A DNA stretch of 64,000 nucleotides, from positions 1 to 64,000 of the IMG/VR virus record IMGVR_UViG_3300049460_000128; one strand, given 5' to 3'. The position numbers and the translations under genes are program-made. Positions 6,189 through 32,638 of this stretch are shown one piece after another. Position 1 is the stretch's first letter. The number at the start of each line of letters is the position of its first letter. Below the pieces are notes generated by a model. It was given only the letters and a program-made list of their open reading frames with translations, did no database searches and was not told where the DNA came from.

Positions 6189-6247
6189 ACAAGTGTCTCC
6201 TGTTATTTTCCACCAATATAGCATGATATGGTATTTAGAAGACAAAT

Positions 6248-6275
6248 AAAAAAGCCCGCCGAAGCGAGCTTTTTT
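6248..6275 (-). terminator. intrinsic terminator ending the tmRNA operon
   Basis: AAAAAAGCTCGC-TTCG-GCGGGCTTTTTT. Confidence 0.85.
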
Positions 6276-6280
6276 GAGAC

Positions 6281-6606
6281 TTGGATGATGAGGTATGTCT
6301 CTACCCCCACCGTTTAGGCTGCTACAGCCTGACGGAACGAAGAATCGTTTGCATTTACAACGTGCCGACTTTTATTTTCGTGAATCATCGACTTTCACGT
6401 GTTGTCATCTTCGGCTTATTCACCCTGTCGAAACCAGGTCAGGCCCATCATATAAGATTCTCTCGCTTACGTCTCGCGGGATACTGCGCTTTATCCTGAT
6501 AGTGGCCAGCGAAGTTTATCATGCGCTGCTGGTCTAACCTACCGAAAATCTATATGGTGGACCTGTGGGGAATCGAACCCCAGTCCAGAATGCCTCTACG
6601 TCCAAA
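6281..6606 (-). ncRNA. ssrA: tmRNA, circularly permuted (two-piece)
   Basis: Acceptor piece ...GGACTGGGGTTCGATTCCCCACAGGTCCACCA ends at 6555; coding piece starts GGGCCTGACCTGGTTTCGAC at 6446; G3:U70 pair; tag ORF 6352-6314 = ANDSSFRQAVAA*. Confidence 0.92.
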
Positions 6607-6668
6607 TCTGTCAGTTGCCTGACCACAACAATGTAATGCGCCTATCAGGCGGGGTAAGCCCCGTCATC

Positions 6669-6750
6669 AATGCGTATTGGTTAGAATACGTTTCCCCTGT
6701 GACCGCTCGAAGTGTCACCCCTGTACTCAGTACCCTAACCAATAAACATT
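6669..6750 (-). ncRNA. candidate small structured RNA
   Basis: Long closing helix AATGTTTATTGGTTAG/CTAACCAATACGCATT with two inner hairpins. Confidence 0.5.
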
Positions 6751-6759
6751 TGCAAAATC

Positions 6760-6898
6760 GTTTAAGCGTGAAGGGAGTCGAACCCTTGAGCGCCCTGCCG
6801 CTACGTTACCGTAGTGTCTGACTCGAACAGACCACTAGGCTCTCCATGCTCTAGTATGTACTCAACCGGGAGATGCCTACCACCCACTGGACCTAAAC
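6760..6898 (-). ncRNA. tRNA-like RNA with two T-loop hairpins
   Basis: 7-bp closing stem GTTTAGG/CTTAAAC; GTCTG-TTCGAGT-CAGAC and GGG-TTCGACT-CCC hairpins. Confidence 0.6.
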
Positions 6899-6936
6899 TT
6901 TTTGCTGGTGACACATTACTGCATCACCAAGACCAC

Positions 6937-6965
6937 AGTATATGGCAATCCATACATGCGGTCAA
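6937..6965 (-). promoter_or_regulatory. sigma70-type promoter of the ncRNA/tmRNA operon
   Basis: TTGACC-17-TATACT. Confidence 0.75.
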
Positions 6966-10434: not shown

Positions 10435-10449
10435 AACTGCCTTTTTGTT

Positions 10450-10626
10450 AGGCACCCCGGGTGGAATCGAACCACCGACCCTTCGATTAAATATCGACCG
10501 CTCTATCGTCAAAACTATTCAACAGGTCAACAGCGGGACGTCACTCGCTATCTTGCTGTCTAGCCGTTTATTCAATTCCACCGGCGACCGTCGTCACCTT
10601 ATGTGGTACCTCTGAGCTACGGGGCA
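10450..10626 (-). ncRNA. tRNA-like RNA (Lys-UUU-like) with ~110-nt D-loop
   Basis: GCCCCG-TA-GCTC...GAGC, anticodon loop TATTTAA, GGTGG-TTCGATT-CCACC, CGGGGT; ends CCT rather than CCA. Confidence 0.7.
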
Positions 10627-10665
10627 TTGCTTGGTTAAAAGATGATTGCTCATCTCTTGAATTCT

Positions 10666-10826
10666 TGGCGTCAACTGCCGGATTCGAACCGGACGACGGA
10701 ATACACTTTTGACCTCTATGAGGCGGGTATGCCCTTACTTTCACCGTTAGGCTGTCCACTTCTGCCCATGCCATTCAGCAAAGACATATCTGCGGCGTTC
10801 GTTCTGCCAGACTGAACTAAGTCAAC
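10666..10826 (-). ncRNA. tRNA frame with anticodon arm replaced by ~105-nt insert
   Basis: Acceptor GTTGACT/AGTTGAC-G-CCA, D arm GTTC-AGTCTGGCA-GAAC, T arm CCGG-TTCGAAT-CCGG. Confidence 0.75.
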
Positions 10827-10828
10827 AA

Positions 10829-10933
10829 GTATGGCGGGGAATTGAACCTCCAGTCCAAAATGAGCAGCACCATGGCGCCGTTTCACTTGGCCCTAGTTTC
10901 CTAGGCTGCTTCCCAAAGCAGCGTCGACCATAC
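10829..10933 (-). ncRNA. tRNA/tmRNA-TLD-like structured RNA
   Basis: GTATGGT/GCCATAC stem, GGACTGGAGG-TTCAATT-CCCC T-arm, three hairpins including CCTAG-GAAA-CTAGG. Confidence 0.55.
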
Positions 10934-11087: not shown

Positions 11088-11939
11088 TCACTTGCGGGGT
11101 TTCTTTATTGCACTGAAAAGTAGCATCAATGCAACACCGGTAAGGAACATCACCCAACTTTCAGGCTCTGGAACAGGAGTCGTAATGGGTGGAGTGACGA
11201 TTGGCGGAACAATCGGTGGAGTAATTACAATGCAGCAACCACCGCCACCACCACCGCCATTGTCGATCGGGCTCCACGGAGTGAATCCGTGCCAACCGTT
11301 ACCGCCAGGATTCACCAATGAATTGTTGGGCTCACCTGAGCCAGTAGTGATACTCCCTGGGGCAACATTTGACGCACCACCACCCCCGCCTCCGCCACCA
11401 CCTTCAGTTGGTTCTGCGGGTTGTTCAGCTTGTGCTTGAGCAACTTCAGCAGTTTCACCACCACCTTTATGTGAACCAGTAGTTACCTGGGTTTCCGGCA
11501 ACCGCTTCACACGGCTGATATTTTGGCAAATAGTTGGTACCAGGATACAAGTTTCGCCCTCGCAGTACACCAATGCTTCCTCTTTACGAGTGGGTGACCA
11601 TTTGTCACGAGTTGTTGCCAGACAGATTTGCGGCTTAGCACTCTTGCCACCAAAGTGCATATCGGTGATGGTCGACTCATATGCGTGGATGCCAGTAATT
11701 CGATCTTTCGTGATGGTCACGACTTCATCGAACTGCTTTTTCTCCAAACGCTGTTTGAACTTAGCCCGCAGTTCAGGCGAAAGATCACGATAATGATCAA
11801 TCGCATTCGAGACGGCGCCCTTGTAGGGATTGACACCTGGGTTGTCCCACGAACAGGTGTCAAGTATTACCGCTTGGGAACTGGCCATGGTCCCCAGGAA
11901 CAAAAGTCCCATCAATGCCTTAAAAAGTTTCATATACAA
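11088..11939 (-). CDS. MHFG-type PEP-CTERM surface protein
   Basis: Signal peptide, CSWDNPG, DMHFGG, Gly-rich linker, C-term VPEPESW + TM helix + KKPRK. Confidence 0.85.
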   Translation of the reverse strand: MYMKLFKALMGLLFLGTMASSQAVILDTCSWDNPGVNPYKGAVSNAIDHYRDLSPELRAKFKQRLEKKQFDEVVTITKDRITGIHAYESTITDMHFGGKSAKPQICLATTRDKWSPTRKEEALVYCEGETCILVPTICQNISRVKRLPETQVTTGSHKGGGETAEVAQAQAEQPAEPTEGGGGGGGGGASNVAPGSITTGSGEPNNSLVNPGGNGWHGFTPWSPIDNGGGGGGGCCIVITPPIVPPIVTPPITTPVPEPESWVMFLTGVALMLLFSAIKKPRK

Positions 11940-12069: not shown

Positions 12070-12091
12070 GTATTCATTAACTGGAGGGAAT

Positions 12092-12520
12092 ATGAAAACC
12101 ATCTCGGCAACGGTAACTCAATATCAAGCAGATGACGGCACGCCATTCGACAGCGAAGCGGCATGCAAGCTGTACGAGGATGAACTGAAACGCACCTCCT
12201 ACTGGATCGTGTACTTCAATCCAGACCTCACGGAAGGGCGGGGCACGCAGTATTCCACGGCATTCAGTGTGGTCACGCCATACGGCAAGAGTGATGCGCA
12301 AATGTGGATGACGGACTACTGCATGCAGAAACATGGTCGCCCAGTGGCATTCGTGCAAGGCGCATCGCCATGCCCAAACTGGACTCTGAGTGAGCTCGAT
12401 CGCAAAGCATACGAAGCCCACAAGGCCCGTACTCCTGATCGTTACAACCAGCACACGGTTGGCGTGTTGAAGCTGAAAGGTGACGACAAGCTGCACTACG
12501 CCTTGACCTTGGTCAAATAG
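12092..12520 (+). CDS. hypothetical phage protein
   Basis: GGAGG RBS, MKTISAT...YQADDGTPFDSEAACKLYE...PDLTEGRG. Confidence 0.8.
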   Translation: MKTISATVTQYQADDGTPFDSEAACKLYEDELKRTSYWIVYFNPDLTEGRGTQYSTAFSVVTPYGKSDAQMWMTDYCMQKHGRPVAFVQGASPCPNWTLSELDRKAYEAHKARTPDRYNQHTVGVLKLKGDDKLHYALTLVK

Positions 12521-12524
12521 TCGT

Positions 12525-12552
12525 AAAAAAGCCCCTAGGCTAGGGGCTTTTT
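12525..12552. terminator. bidirectional intrinsic terminator
   Basis: AAAAAAGCCCCTAG-G-CTAGGGGCTTTTT between convergent units. Confidence 0.85.
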
Positions 12553-12555
12553 GTT

Positions 12556-12709
12556 TGGTGGCGAGAGGAGGGGTCGAACCTCCAATGTGCTACACATTGA
12601 CAAATATGCGTGCTCGAGGATCCGGATCCAATTGGCCGCCCTACACTCGTCAACTTAGAACACTCTCCAGCTCATCGGCTGGCGTATCTACCAATTCTAC
12701 TACCCCGCC
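12556..12709 (-). ncRNA. tRNA frame with ~80-nt variable-region insert and 6-nt anticodon loop
   Basis: GGCGGGG/TCTCGCC-A-CCA, D arm with AATTGGTAGA, CCAGC-CGATGA-GCTGG, GGAGG-TTCGACC-CCTCC. Confidence 0.75.
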
Positions 12710-12712
12710 TAA

Positions 12713-13062
12713 AATGTAATGGTGGATGACCGTTGGTGTGCTATTACGCCCAATGCTCAACGGGTCTTGTACGACATCGCGCTTACTCTAATCCCTTTAC
12801 CCTCAGCGCTTACCTAGGGGCCGTTATCCTTCGGCATCCTGTAGTCATGGGCTACGCCCCATAACATGATGACCAATTTCCTGCCAGCTGGGAAATTGTT
12901 GCCATCTTATCGTACAAACTGTACTTGTCCTTCCCCGGTGGATTATGCGCGATGATTGCCACCATCTGAAGCTGGGATCGCTTCCGCCCTTATCCACTTT
13001 GCAACTCTTTAAAGGATGGCTGCTTCTAAGCCCACCTTCCAAAAGTCATCCACCATTACATT
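12713..13062 (-). ncRNA. structured RNA containing a split mimic of 23S rRNA H43/H44 (GTPase-associated centre)
   Basis: Perfect 18-bp terminal helix; GGCTTAGAAGCAGCCATCCTTTAAAGAG (13032-13005) and GCGTAATAGCACAC (12749-12736). Confidence 0.85.
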
Positions 13063-30895: not shown

Positions 30896-31743
30896 ATTGC
30901 CCTCGGCGGAATAGGTATGTCCATTTCAGTAAGTTGGCGGCAATATAGATCCCATATGAGATCACTACACTGGATCAAGGTGGGATTTTCTCGTATACGC
31001 TTAGCCACTTCTTCGTAACTATTTACGTCTTTTTCCATTACGCCGCACCCAAACAACACTTCGCATATCTGATCAGGATTGTCCCAATGATGTTCACCCA
31101 GATACAATAGCTCTGGGAATAAGGTTGAGAAGTCAGGAGCCACTGCATCGGTCACTCGTACCATTGTTGCAGTAAAGCCATGCCCGTCTTTGCGTGGTGG
31201 GCACCATCTTGCACCATAATGCAAACCAGTATCACTCATGAGTGTATACCCAATTCTAGCCACAACTCGACCATCCCTGATTGCAGTCACACTGAGGGCT
31301 TTTGCGACGGCTTTGATCAGTTGAGTTCTATGACTGCCAGCATAGTTACTAGTTGAGGGATGTGGTGCCCAATTGGTGAATTGCAATAAGGTGGCATTGC
31401 CTATCATGAAGTCAACTTGGCAGAACTTCCGACCCTTTGTATTCGGTATTGCGACCCTACTGTACACTTGGCTGAACTGTGGCTGCACCTTCACGTTATC
31501 TTGACCAAAGGCAGTCTTGAGACGATCAATGAAATCCACGTATGAGTATTCCTTGTGATTGACTGCTAGATCAATATCGCCGCATATTGATTTCTTGCCC
31601 GTACTTCCCAGCAATGTGAAATTGATTGGGTTTACGAGCTTCCGTTTGATAGAGCGAATCACACTGGGAATCAGTGTCGCATCTATGGGTTTTGTGTTGT
31701 TAAATGCGTTACCGCCCATTGATGATTCCATTAAGTTGATCAC
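30892..31743 (-). CDS. nucleotidyltransferase (Pol beta superfamily)
   Basis: MGGNAF, LLGSTGKK..GDIDL, QVDFM. Confidence 0.75.
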   Translation of the reverse strand: MINLMESSMGGNAFNNTKPIDATLIPSVIRSIKRKLVNPINFTLLGSTGKKSICGDIDLAVNHKEYSYVDFIDRLKTAFGQDNVKVQPQFSQVYSRVAIPNTKGRKFCQVDFMIGNATLLQFTNWAPHPSTSNYAGSHRTQLIKAVAKALSVTAIRDGRVVARIGYTLMSDTGLHYGARWCPPRKDGHGFTATMVRVTDAVAPDFSTLFPELLYLGEHHWDNPDQICEVLFGCGVMEKDVNSYEEVAKRIRENPTLIQCSDLIWDLYCRQLTEMDIPIPPRAI

Positions 31744-32638
31744 GAAGACTCAGCACAGCCTCCAGATTTCGTGCGTGAACCCATTCATCCAATGTTGCCG
31801 TCTGTGGGTCAAGCAAGTATGCATCAAAGTGCTGTTGTATTGATGCCAACGCAGCATATGACGCTCCAACGATATCTTGGGTAGAATCTCGTGTGTGTAT
31901 GTCCATGACCGTCATATCGCGCATATACGACGATCTCATCAGTTTGCGACGAAGTCCTTGATTGTGAGTATTAAGTGTGGTGAAGAATGCCCGGTCCACA
32001 AGCTTCAACTGCCAGCCACTGTTATGACGGAATACCAATCCTTCAATTTTAGTTGGACCAAACATCGAAGTTCGTCCACGCACCAGTTTATCCAATAGAG
32101 TTTCGTAATCGTATGCTTCAAGTGACTTGAAGGTATCTAGCCACTCAGATGATGGAATCTCTTTCAGATCGGTCATCTGCCAATCAGTAGTTCTGGTCTT
32201 CTTAATATTGCGAATACCATCATCGGTGCTGGGATATTGGAAGTTTTTGACTTGACCTTCAGCATAGAATCCAATGTCATCAGGGTGAAATACCACGATG
32301 CGATTAACTACCTGGTCGTACTGAATTGTATTGGGATGATTGACTGAAAGGATTTCAGCTTTGATCTCAGCATTGGTGCCGTATGTTGCCACCAATTGAT
32401 CCTCGATTGATTTCAGGAAGGTATGTGCTTCGCGGAAGTCAGTAGTCCAGAAATTGAAATCCCAGCCAGTTGGTTCGTAGACATTGAAACGACCTTGACG
32501 AATTGAAACTTCGCCTTCTTCGATATCAATTTGAAATGTAGAGCCATCCACTTTTTCCTGACATATGAATTCTTCAGGATGTTCAAGGAACAGTTGTTGG
32601 CGCTTTTTGGAGAGTTTGTCGTAATGTAAAATGCTCAT
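31709..32638 (-). CDS. RNA ligase-like covalent nucleotidyltransferase
   Basis: EKVDGS (motif I), IEGLVF (motif IV), LKLVD (motif V). Confidence 0.65.
   Translation of the reverse strand: MSILHYDKLSKKRQQLFLEHPEEFICQEKVDGSTFQIDIEEGEVSIRQGRFNVYEPTGWDFNFWTTDFREAHTFLKSIEDQLVATYGTNAEIKAEILSVNHPNTIQYDQVVNRIVVFHPDDIGFYAEGQVKNFQYPSTDDGIRNIKKTRTTDWQMTDLKEIPSSEWLDTFKSLEAYDYETLLDKLVRGRTSMFGPTKIEGLVFRHNSGWQLKLVDRAFFTTLNTHNQGLRRKLMRSSYMRDMTVMDIHTRDSTQDIVGASYAALASIQQHFDAYLLDPQTATLDEWVHARNLEAVLSLRDQLNGIINGR

What the first reader, a model, noticed from the sequence alone, without database searches (positions are those of the whole stretch)
10666..10826. tRNA with intact acceptor, D and T arms and CCA, but the anticodon arm replaced by ~105 nt
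Seen: acceptor GTTGACT/AGTTGAC-G-CCA and canonical D and T loops. Region 10694-10800 replaces the anticodon and variable arms and has its own hairpins. This is the layout of engineered tRNA-scaffold expression constructs, occurring naturally. Inference: it is processed by RNase P and 3' nucleases into a stable carrier RNA.
Basis: partly seen in the sequence, partly recalled or inferred. Interest (0 to 1): 0.75.

Follow-up and report, generated by a model that had tools for sequence, protein, structure and literature searches.

The report
Oversized tRNA-shaped gene in jumbo phage
A jumbo-phage gene has both ends of a normal tRNA but about 88 extra bases where the anticodon loop should be; such oversized tRNA genes prove common in large phages (earlier noted as 'enigmatic introns'), and whether or how the extra piece is removed is still unknown.

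Summary
On the minus strand, 10826..10666 carries a 7-bp acceptor stem, U8, a canonical D arm, a T arm and G-CCA, with no anticodon arm. A strict descriptor finds only this element and the two true tRNA-Met genes in 593 kb, and nothing in shuffles. The middle is not unusually structured. It is closed by a 4-bp anticodon-stem-like helix, so 88 nt replace the loop.

It is not unique. Three neighbours (B, C, D) are also aberrant tRNA frames. Two other large phages carry A-like frames, one with a homologous insert core. One D-arm pattern recovers at least 85 insert-bearing tRNA frames in IMG/VR. Lak-megaphage work already reported 'enigmatic tRNA introns', and T4 rnaC has the same layout.

In A no excision restores a tRNA better than chance. 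Its homologue L031 restores a CAA tRNA, with the cut at the same site (nt 32/33). No known splicing machinery or ribozyme was found.

Best reading (0.4): A descends from an insert-bearing tRNA(CAA) gene. It is now a non-decoding, tRNA-processed stable RNA that keeps its insert. Main rival (0.3): it is still spliced. It is a new member of a known but unexplained kind.

The parts
10666..10826 (-). Element A: whole tRNA-shaped gene, 161 nt including the encoded G-CCA
10820..10826 (-). Acceptor stem, 5' strand GUUGACU
   Evidence: Read from sequence. All 7 pairs covary among A, L031 and L029, but acceptor pairing was my selection criterion for those two.
10801..10817 (-). D arm: GUUC-AGUCUGGCA-GAAC
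10795..10798 (-). Closing helix, 5' strand ACGC, at the anticodon-stem position (nt 28-31)
   Evidence: one compensatory pair (A-U to U-A) between A and L031
10707..10794 (-). 88-nt insert replacing the anticodon loop. The candidate intron is 10793-10713 (81 nt, between nt 32 and 33), which would leave the loop CUCAAAA.
   Evidence: Not more stable than shuffles. No Rfam match.
10703..10762 (-). Roughly 60-nt core shared with the insert of L031: ACAGC(C)UAA(C)GG .. AAGUAAGG .. AUACC(C/U)GCC .. UCAA(A)AGUG
   Evidence: local alignment z=3.5; 4 of 500 shuffles score as high
10703..10706 (-). Closing helix, 3' strand GUGU (nt 39-42)
10677..10693 (-). T arm: UCCGG-UUCGAAU-CCGGC (4 of 5 pairs)
10666..10676 (-). 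Acceptor stem 3' strand AGUUGAC, discriminator G, and encoded CCA
10829..10933 (-). Neighbour C: tRNA-Sec-like frame. Its anticodon stem is capped by GAAA and it has an enlarged variable arm. Its discriminator is one nucleotide before A's G1.
   Evidence: 24.2 bits, below the gathering score of 47
10452..10626 (-). Neighbour B: complete tRNA-Lys(UUU) body (loop UAUUUAA, with A33) carrying a roughly 100-103-nt insert in the D loop (10504-10606)
   Evidence: An RNA-library contig spans 10447-10640 with the insert included.
12556..12709 (-). Neighbour D: tRNA-Leu-like frame with a 6-nt anticodon loop (CGAUGA), a 77-nt variable-arm hairpin, and A-CCA

Best explanation
A descends from an insert-bearing tRNA(CAA)-type gene of the kind common in large phages. 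It now most likely works as a non-decoding, tRNA-shaped stable RNA that keeps its insert.

Shown:
- The acceptor, D and T arms and the CCA are intact and far beyond chance.
- A short helix at the anticodon-stem position closes an 88-nt insert.
- That insert shares a roughly 60-nt core with the insert of an A-like element in an unrelated 178-kb phage.
- A sits one nucleotide after another tRNA frame (C) and 39 nt before a third (B).

Inferred:
- The cluster is transcribed as one precursor.
- RNase P cuts at G1 (position -1 is U). That same cut releases the 3' end of C.
- The 3' end is trimmed to the encoded CCA.
- The elbow and acceptor/T stack give the RNA tRNA-like stability and access to tRNA-binding factors. 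The degenerate body and missing anticodon loop keep it out of decoding.

What the insert does is unknown. It could be cargo or a decoy for tRNA-directed host factors.
For: 1. The frame is real.
2. No excision restores an anticodon arm better than chance. The best spliced product (ARAGORN 109.5-109.9) scores below every restored member of my 67-frame survey (minimum 113.2). It has a 4-bp stem, an 8-nt variable loop, a T-stem mismatch and two G.U pairs in the acceptor, which looks like a body kept for its shape rather than for decoding.
3. The neighbours are also non-decoding frames. C has its anticodon stem capped by GAAA. D has a 6-nt loop.
4. Neighbour B appears in a soil metatranscriptome as a 194-nt contig that spans just the element, with its insert. 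Fourteen of the 15 listed differences lie in the insert, and one G-C to A-U change in an insert hairpin is compensatory.
5. The four inserts in this window share no sequence, so they are not copies of one mobile element.
6. No RtcB or splicing endonuclease was found in the three phages, and no T4 Rnl1-type ligase in this one. There is no ribozyme or intron hit in Rfam.
7. There is a precedent. T4 rnaC, an annotated small stable RNA in the T4 tRNA cluster, has a T arm and acceptor-like stem around non-tRNA hairpins.
Against: - There is no RNA evidence for A itself.
- The insert is not thermodynamically structured.
- A's 3' junction reads U33-CAA-A37-A38, directly followed by the strand that pairs with nt 28-31. 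Normal-length phage tRNAs with the same loop CUCAAAA exist.
- The homologue L031 restores a good tRNA(CAA) with the cut at the same site, 32/33 (122.3 against 115.6+-3.2; 1 of 40 shuffles).
- Across phages most insert-bearing frames restore high-scoring tRNAs (41 of 67).
- The unspliced contig for B could be a precursor, because standard RNA-seq under-samples mature tRNA.
- A near-threshold Rnl2-type RNA ligase ORF exists at 31709-32638.
Confidence: 0.4

Rival explanations
1. A is still an intron-containing tRNA gene. About 81 nt (10793-10713) are cut out between nt 32 and 33 and the halves rejoined. The enzymes are not yet identified; candidates are a host RtcB-type ligase or the phage's Rnl2-like ORF, plus an unknown endonuclease. 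The product would be an 80-nt tRNA with loop CUCAAAA (anticodon CAA) that decodes UUG.
For: - Insert-bearing tRNA frames are widespread in phage contigs: at least 118 loci from one D-arm pattern, 85 with at least 6/7 acceptor pairs.
- 41 of 67 unique frames give ARAGORN >=122 after one excision.
- A 13-member family has its insert at one fixed site (nt 28/29) with a shared hairpin plus (U/A)AC(A/U)GCAA motif, in seven tRNA identities.
- The Lak megaphage paper reports conserved tRNA introns and alignments with intron-less alleles.
- L031 has a homologous insert core, the same cut site and the same anticodon, and restores at 122.3 (1 of 40 shuffles as good).
- Normal 77-78-nt phage tRNAs carry the loops CUCAAAA and UUCAAGU.
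- A has a 4/5-paired stem in the correct register.
Against: - In A the restored tRNA is no better than chance and weaker than every survey member.
- At 81-88 nt the insert is far below group I size (group I size from my own knowledge), and I saw no bulge-helix-bulge arrangement when reading the junctions by eye.
- No RtcB or EndA in G000, G001 or G002, and no T4 Rnl1-type ligase in G000.
- No splicing mechanism for such inserts is known in bacteria.
- Neighbours C and D cannot be rescued by excision.
Confidence: 0.3
2. A is a decaying relic: a former insert-bearing tRNA gene that no longer has a function and has not yet been deleted.
For: - Degenerate body: two G.U pairs in the acceptor, a T-stem mismatch, and a weak anticodon-stem remnant.
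- Unstructured insert.
- No close relative was found in which to test constraint.
Against: - All seven acceptor pairs, the D stem, the tertiary-contact nucleotides and the CCA are intact.
- The G.U pairs keep the stem paired.
- The insert core is still recognisable against a very distant phage.
- Spacing within the three-gene cluster is tight.
- From general knowledge, phage genomes purge useless DNA quickly.
Confidence: 0.15
3. A is a small tmRNA-like or Y-RNA-like molecule. That is, its tRNA-like domain recruits SmpB or Ro-type proteins, and the insert acts as a tag template or tether.
For: - The phage encodes a two-piece tmRNA and SmpB.
- The topology (tRNA ends around an internal domain) is that of tmRNA.
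- A 23-codon open frame runs through the insert (read by eye).
Against: - No G3.U70; the acceptor has U3.G70 and G4.U69.
- A full D stem is present, which tmRNA lacks (from my own knowledge).
- An open frame of that length is expected by chance about 30% of the time.
- No TROVE/Ro gene.
- No Rfam tmRNA or YrlA hit on A.
- In Y RNAs the 5' and 3' ends form the Ro-binding stem, not an acceptor stem (from my own knowledge; the paper was only listed, not read).
Confidence: 0.03

Closest known systems
'Enigmatic' tRNA introns of Lak megaphages and other huge phages (Devoto et al., bioRxiv 10.1101/356790; Nat Microbiol 2019, PMC6784885)
   Same: Both are oversized tRNA genes in very large phage genomes, with inserts of tens of nucleotides and no recognised intron class. 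[quoted passage not shown] My survey bears this out.
   Different: In Lak phages the inserts are described as excisable, with intron-less alleles. In A no excision restores a tRNA above chance, and the insert is longer (81-88 nt).
Phage T4 rnaC (species 1 RNA), a small stable RNA in the T4 tRNA cluster
   Same: It lies in a phage tRNA array. It has a canonical T arm (CCGGG-UUCGAAU-CCCGG) next to a terminal acceptor-like stem, with non-tRNA hairpins between. It is 139 nt and its function is unknown.
   Different: rnaC has no D arm, and its terminal stem has 5 of 7 pairs. It is very stably folded (z=-4.6), whereas A is not (z=+0.7). There is no detectable sequence similarity.
Engineered tRNA scaffold for recombinant RNA expression (Ponchon/Dardel approach; PMC3753655, listed, details from my own knowledge)
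   Same: Same topology: acceptor, D and T arms plus the anticodon stem are kept, and the anticodon loop is replaced by foreign RNA.
   Different: The scaffold is artificial, and its payloads are structured. For A, stability and processing are untested.
tmRNA
   Same: A tRNA-like domain formed by the two ends, enclosing a large internal domain. The same phage encodes one, plus SmpB.
   Different: A has a full D arm, no G3.U70, no pseudoknots, and no Rfam hit.
Bacterial group I tRNA introns, and archaeal/eukaryal bulge-helix-bulge tRNA introns
   Same: The insert lies in the anticodon loop of a tRNA gene.
   Different: A's insert is far shorter than group I introns (about 200 nt or more, from my own knowledge). 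There is no Rfam intron hit. No bulge-helix-bulge motif is visible at the junctions by eye. No splicing endonuclease or RtcB is present.

Membership tests
Canonical tRNA (Rfam RF00005 / ARAGORN) | Acceptor stem, D arm and T arm with the conserved tertiary nucleotides, and an NCCA end | tested here: met
   7/7 acceptor pairs, U8, A14, G18G19, A21, UUCGAAU, G-CCA
Canonical tRNA (Rfam RF00005 / ARAGORN) | Anticodon arm: 5-bp stem and 7-nt loop with U33 and R37, at the canonical spacing | tested here: not met
   not called by ARAGORN or Rfam, and no such hairpin exists in the element
Insert-bearing ('intron-containing') tRNA genes of large phages | A single tRNA frame (paired acceptor strands, D and T arms) in a phage, with tens of extra nucleotides in or near the anticodon arm | tested here: met
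Insert-bearing ('intron-containing') tRNA genes of large phages | One precise excision restores a normal, high-scoring tRNA | tested here: inconclusive
   A scores 109.9 against a null of 110.8+-3.3. However, the homologue L031 scores 122.3 with the cut at the same site (1 of 40 shuffles as good), and A's junction reads U-CAA-AA followed by the stem strand.
Insert-bearing ('intron-containing') tRNA genes of large phages | The insert is removed from the RNA | not testable with these tools
Group I intron in a tRNA | Conserved catalytic core (P3-P9) and a size of about 200 nt or more | tested here: not met
   The insert is 81-88 nt. No Rfam intron hit at E<=10.
Bulge-helix-bulge (archaeal-type) tRNA intron | A 3-nt bulge / 4-bp helix / 3-nt bulge at the junctions, and a splicing endonuclease plus RtcB available | tested here: not met
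   No such motif found by eye at the 10794/10793 and 10713/10712 junctions (sequences). PF01974 and PF01139 are absent from G000, G001 and G002. The host's own enzymes were not testable.
tmRNA | G3.U70 alanine identity, a D-loop analogue without a stem, pseudoknots, and a tag reading frame | tested here: not met
   U3.G70 and G4.U69, and a full D stem. No tmRNA model hit on A.
T4 rnaC-like stable RNA of phage tRNA clusters | Located in a phage tRNA array, with a T arm adjacent to a terminal stem enclosing non-tRNA RNA | tested here: met
   (resemblance in layout only; no sequence homology)
T4 rnaC-like stable RNA of phage tRNA clusters | Accumulates as a discrete stable RNA | not testable with these tools
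   Only neighbour B has an RNA-library contig.

The most novel reading that the evidence does not exclude
Large-phage tRNA arrays act as a display platform for non-tRNA RNA modules. tRNA frames (A, B, C, D and the A-like elements of other phages) and tRNA punctuation are used to make, trim and stabilise RNAs that imitate parts of the translation apparatus. Right next door sits a near-exact copy of the 23S rRNA L11/L10-binding centre. In this reading the RNAs are decoys or sponges for host factors or defence nucleases that act on tRNA and rRNA. A's insert would then be retained cargo, not an intron.
Probability: 0.2. Interest if true: 0.85.

Novelty: new member of a known kind. Interest (0 to 1): 0.55.

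Why it matters
Bacteria have no known way to splice short protein-dependent tRNA introns. Yet insert-bearing tRNA genes appear in hundreds of phage contigs, some at a fixed site with a conserved motif. There are two possibilities: an unrecognised RNA cut-and-join pathway operates during phage infection, or phages make tRNA-shaped RNAs that are not tRNAs.

This locus is useful because it holds four different versions side by side: an insert in the D loop, an insert in the anticodon loop, a capped anticodon stem, and a giant variable arm. It also sits next to a ribosomal-RNA mimic and a phage tmRNA/SmpB pair. One RNA-end-mapping experiment on such a phage would settle a question left open since the Lak phage report, and arguably since T4 species 1 RNA.

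Tried and rejected
- **ARAGORN with introns allowed** finds nothing at default thresholds and only noise at lowered ones.
- **Close relatives.** None found in IMG/VR, the JGI metagenomes or the 5.8-billion-protein set, using exon patterns, the sigma factor or the adjacent 90-aa protein. My first protein query (12077-12496, minus strand) was an antisense artefact; the real gene is on the plus strand.
- **Insert-motif scan** (AAGUAAGG..AUACC.GCC): 39 loci, all but L031 apparently chance matches lacking a T loop or the shared context.
- **GTDB scan** with a frame-plus-GAUAU pattern: only chance hits; none has a tRNA frame.
- **Last IMG/VR scan** with a 3'-exon pattern gave normal tRNAs plus one unclear long frame, L331.
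- **Shared mobile element.** The inserts of A, B, C and D share nothing.
- **Antisense targets.** No significant complementarity of the inserts to the rest of the phage genome.
- **rRNA mimicry by the A, B or C inserts.** None against a complete rRNA operon.
- **Rfam ribozymes, riboswitches, Y RNA.** No hit.
- **Reverse transcriptase, Ro/TROVE, CCA-adding enzyme, T4 Rnl1.** Absent from the held contig. The Rnl1 control rang nowhere, so that absence is weak.
- **Cultured phage with the fixed-site insert.** The BLAST query matched only exon sequence.

Full report
**Where and what.** The window is the first 64 kb of a 296.6-kb IMG/VR jumbo-phage contig. The element lies on the minus strand, 10826..10666. 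Read 5'->3' it has:
- acceptor strand GUUGACU, then U8-A9
- D arm GUUC-AGUCUGGCA-GAAC, then G26
- about 107 nt of other sequence
- T arm UCCGG-UUCGAAU-CCGGC
- acceptor strand AGUUGAC, discriminator G, and CCA

All seven acceptor pairs form (two are G.U). The T stem has one U x C mismatch.

A descriptor asking for a 7/7 acceptor, U8, a 4-bp D stem with A14 and GG, and a T arm matches only this element and the two genuine tRNA-Met genes (255936-256092) on both strands of the genome. It matches nothing in 20 shuffled genomes. ARAGORN and the Rfam tRNA model do not call the element, and no anticodon-arm-like hairpin exists inside it.

**The middle.** It is not more stable than shuffled sequence: z=+0.70 for the whole element and z=+0.31 for the middle alone. 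So 'its own hairpins' is not supported. It matches no Rfam family even in a 201-nt search. It has no significant complement elsewhere in the phage and no similarity to rRNA.

I deleted every possible segment and rescored with ARAGORN. The best products are a Leu-like form with a long variable arm, or an 80-nt form with loop CUCAAAA after removing 10793-10713. Both score about 109.5-109.9. With the middle shuffled, the same procedure gives 110.8+-3.3, and 25 of 40 shuffles do at least as well. In A itself, no excision restores an anticodon arm beyond chance.

**Neighbours.** A is one of four aberrant tRNA frames on this strand.
- *B (10626..10452)* is a complete tRNA-Lys(UUU) body. Its D-stem 3' strand, G26, anticodon arm (loop UAUUUAA, with A33), 5-nt variable loop and T arm are contiguous. 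It is interrupted by about 100-103 nt in the D loop. It folds unusually stably (z=-3.1), partly because 13 nt of the insert are complementary to its own T arm.
- *C (10933..10829)* aligns end to end with the tRNA-Sec model at 24 bits, below threshold. Its anticodon stem is capped by GAAA and its variable arm is enlarged. Its discriminator is one nucleotide before A's G1.
- *D (12709..12556)* passes the Rfam tRNA threshold (31.5 bits). It has a Leu-type D arm, a 6-nt anticodon loop, a 77-nt variable-arm hairpin, and A-CCA.

The four inserts share no sequence.

**RNA evidence.** One soil metatranscriptome run holds a 194-nt contig, about 91% identical, spanning 10447-10640. That is element B with its insert and only a few flanking bases. 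No contig covers A, C or D. Of the 15 listed differences, 14 lie in the insert, and one pair (AGCG/CGCU to AACG/CGUU) is compensatory in an insert hairpin. Three differences near the contig ends are not listed, so the contrast between exons and insert is only suggestive. The contig shows that an insert-containing form exists in an RNA library. It cannot exclude a spliced form, because mature tRNAs are poorly captured, and DNA carry-over is not excluded either.

**A is not unique.** Using A's D-arm and T-loop consensus with a 90-120-nt gap, IMG/VR returned 20 loci. Eighteen are simply two adjacent tRNAs. Two are single frames with 7/7 acceptor pairing and no ordinary tRNA: L031 (G001, a 178-kb phage) and L029 (G002, a 239-kb phage). 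Both lie inside tRNA arrays. G001 also has a permuted tmRNA whose tag (ANDSQYRVAA) resembles this phage's (ANDSSFRQAVAA).

Across the three elements the frame helices are 94.8% paired, with ten pairs changed on both sides. Acceptor pairing was my selection criterion, and the D stem and two T pairs were fixed by the pattern, so this is not independent proof. All three keep a 4-5-bp helix at the anticodon-stem position.

The inserts of A and L031 share a core of about 60 nt (z=3.5; 4 of 500 shuffles as good). L029's insert is unrelated. In L031, removing 85 nt between nt 32 and 33 gives a tRNA with loop UUCAAGU scoring 122.3, against 115.6+-3.2 for shuffles (1 of 40). L029 is not significant. 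A's best cut is at the same site and gives the same anticodon, CAA. Normal 77-78-nt phage tRNAs with loops CUCAAAA and UUCAAGU exist.

**The wider class.** A second pattern used the commonest D arm and a 50-80-nt gap, which is too short for two adjacent tRNAs. Of these, 85 have at least 6/7 acceptor pairs, giving 67 unique sequences. After one excision, 41 of the 67 score at least 122.

Thirteen form a family with a 39-52-nt insert at about one site, between nt 28 and 29 in the 5' strand of the anticodon stem. The insert is built as a hairpin plus (U/A)AC(A/U)GCAA. The family interrupts tRNAs for Pro, Asn, Ile, Gln, Thr, Asp and Lys. Other frames carry inserts in the anticodon loop, some with a T-arm-like hairpin. 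[quoted passage not shown] So the kind is known, and its mechanism is not.

**Machinery.**
- RtcB and the splicing endonuclease are absent from all three phage contigs.
- T4 Rnl1, a CCA-adding enzyme, Ro and reverse transcriptase are absent from this one.
- A 309-aa ORF (31709-32638, minus strand) matches the Rnl2-type RNA ligase family just under threshold (26.1 against 27 bits).
- The contig is estimated to be 70% complete, and host enzymes are unknown.

**Known comparators.** T4's tRNA cluster encodes rnaC ('small, stable RNA; species 1 RNA', 139 nt). It has a canonical T arm beside a terminal stem, and two hairpins where the rest of a tRNA would be. That is the same layout, and its function is unknown. 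The engineered tRNA scaffold has the same topology. tmRNA, Y RNA, group I introns and bulge-helix-bulge introns each fail a defining feature (see the membership table).

**Verdict.** The history seems clear: A derives from an insert-bearing tRNA(CAA) gene of a widespread phage class. Its present function is not settled.

I favour a non-decoding RNA that is end-processed like a tRNA and keeps its insert (0.4). The reasons are that A's body is more degenerate than any restorable member of the survey, its neighbours C and D are plainly non-decoding, B is seen unspliced, and no splicing route is evident. The spliced-tRNA reading stays close behind (0.3), because of L031 and the behaviour of the class. 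A relic gets 0.15.

RNase P and 3' trimming are inferred from geometry only. Nothing here tests them.

Noticed in passing
window 12713-13062 (minus strand): core mimic 13000-13038, second piece about 12735-12750: A noncoding RNA domain closed by an 18-bp helix (13062-13045 with 12730-12713). It begins with a near-exact copy of the 23S rRNA L11/L10-binding centre: 30 of 32 nt match positions 1045-1076 of a real 23S gene. It ends with GGGCGUAAUAGCAC, which resembles the rRNA strand that follows. It ends 3 nt before tRNA-like D. A promoter-like site lies at 13316-13288 and a terminator palindrome follows D. The same mimic sits in unannotated gaps in or beside tRNA genes in Pseudomonas phages pf16, UNO-G1W1 and Astolliot and in Aeromonas phage 4_4572, and in an unannotated gap beside a 2'-5' RNA ligase gene in Xanthomonas XacN1. 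BLAST also hit Milchi, XaC1 and Paenibacillus Pd_22F (contexts not inspected), and it occurs twice in G001. I found no Rfam family and no paper on it..
   Followed up: partly
window 10452-10626 (minus strand): Element B: a tRNA-Lys(UUU) body with A33 instead of U33 and an insert of about 100 nt in the D loop. Thirteen nt of the insert (GGUGGAAUUGAAU) can pair with its own T arm, giving an alternative non-tRNA fold (z=-3.1). It is the only element seen in an RNA library, and it is seen unspliced..
   Followed up: partly
window 10829-10933 and 12556-12709 (minus strand); G001:134308-134380: tRNA frames with disabled anticodon loops. C is tRNA-Sec-like with its anticodon stem capped by GAAA. D is Leu-like with a 6-nt loop (CGAUGA) and a 77-nt variable arm. 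The unrelated phage G001 also has a frame with a 6-nt loop ('ac')..
   Followed up: partly
IMG/VR loci L192-L306, e.g. L288, L206, L232, L210, L209, L192, L306: A family of 39-52-nt inserts at about one fixed site (between tRNA nt 28 and 29), built as a hairpin plus (U/A)AC(A/U)GCAA. It interrupts tRNAs of seven identities in many phage contigs. Excision restores ARAGORN scores of 122-129. Its ACAGC block resembles that of the A/L031 core. Two other frames (L213, L271) share a different conserved insert (GUAGGGAGUCAUGACCUGAG)..
   Followed up: partly
window 6223-6647 (minus strand); genome 269253-269684 (plus strand): The phage carries its own two-piece (permuted, beta-proteobacterial type) tmRNA with tag ANDSSFRQAVAA, and a full SmpB gene. 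Upstream of the tmRNA (6650-6940) are further T-arm-like hairpins behind a promoter-like site at 6965-6937..
   Followed up: partly
window 31709-32638 (minus strand): A 309-aa ORF with a near-threshold, almost full-length match to the Rnl2-type RNA ligase family (PF09414; 26.1 against 27 bits). It is a possible RNA repair or joining enzyme..
   Followed up: partly
window 11088-11933 (minus strand): The gene just upstream of the tRNA-like cluster encodes a secreted-looking, glycine-rich protein. Its C-terminus reads like a PEP-CTERM sorting signal (…PEPESW, then a hydrophobic stretch, then KKPRK). This was read by eye; there is no Pfam hit. If real, it hints at an exosortase-bearing host.
   Followed up: no
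window 12077-12520: The 139-aa minus-strand ORF here is an antisense artefact. The real gene is on the plus strand (GGAGGG, then ATG at about 12096) and converges on the bidirectional terminator at 12525-12555..
   Followed up: yes
G002:95746-95848 and G002:90382-90510 (minus strand): The phage that carries the A-like element L029 has two more oversized frames (99 and 125 nt). Their anticodon stems are extended or have the loop replaced by about 30 and 55 nt..
   Followed up: partly
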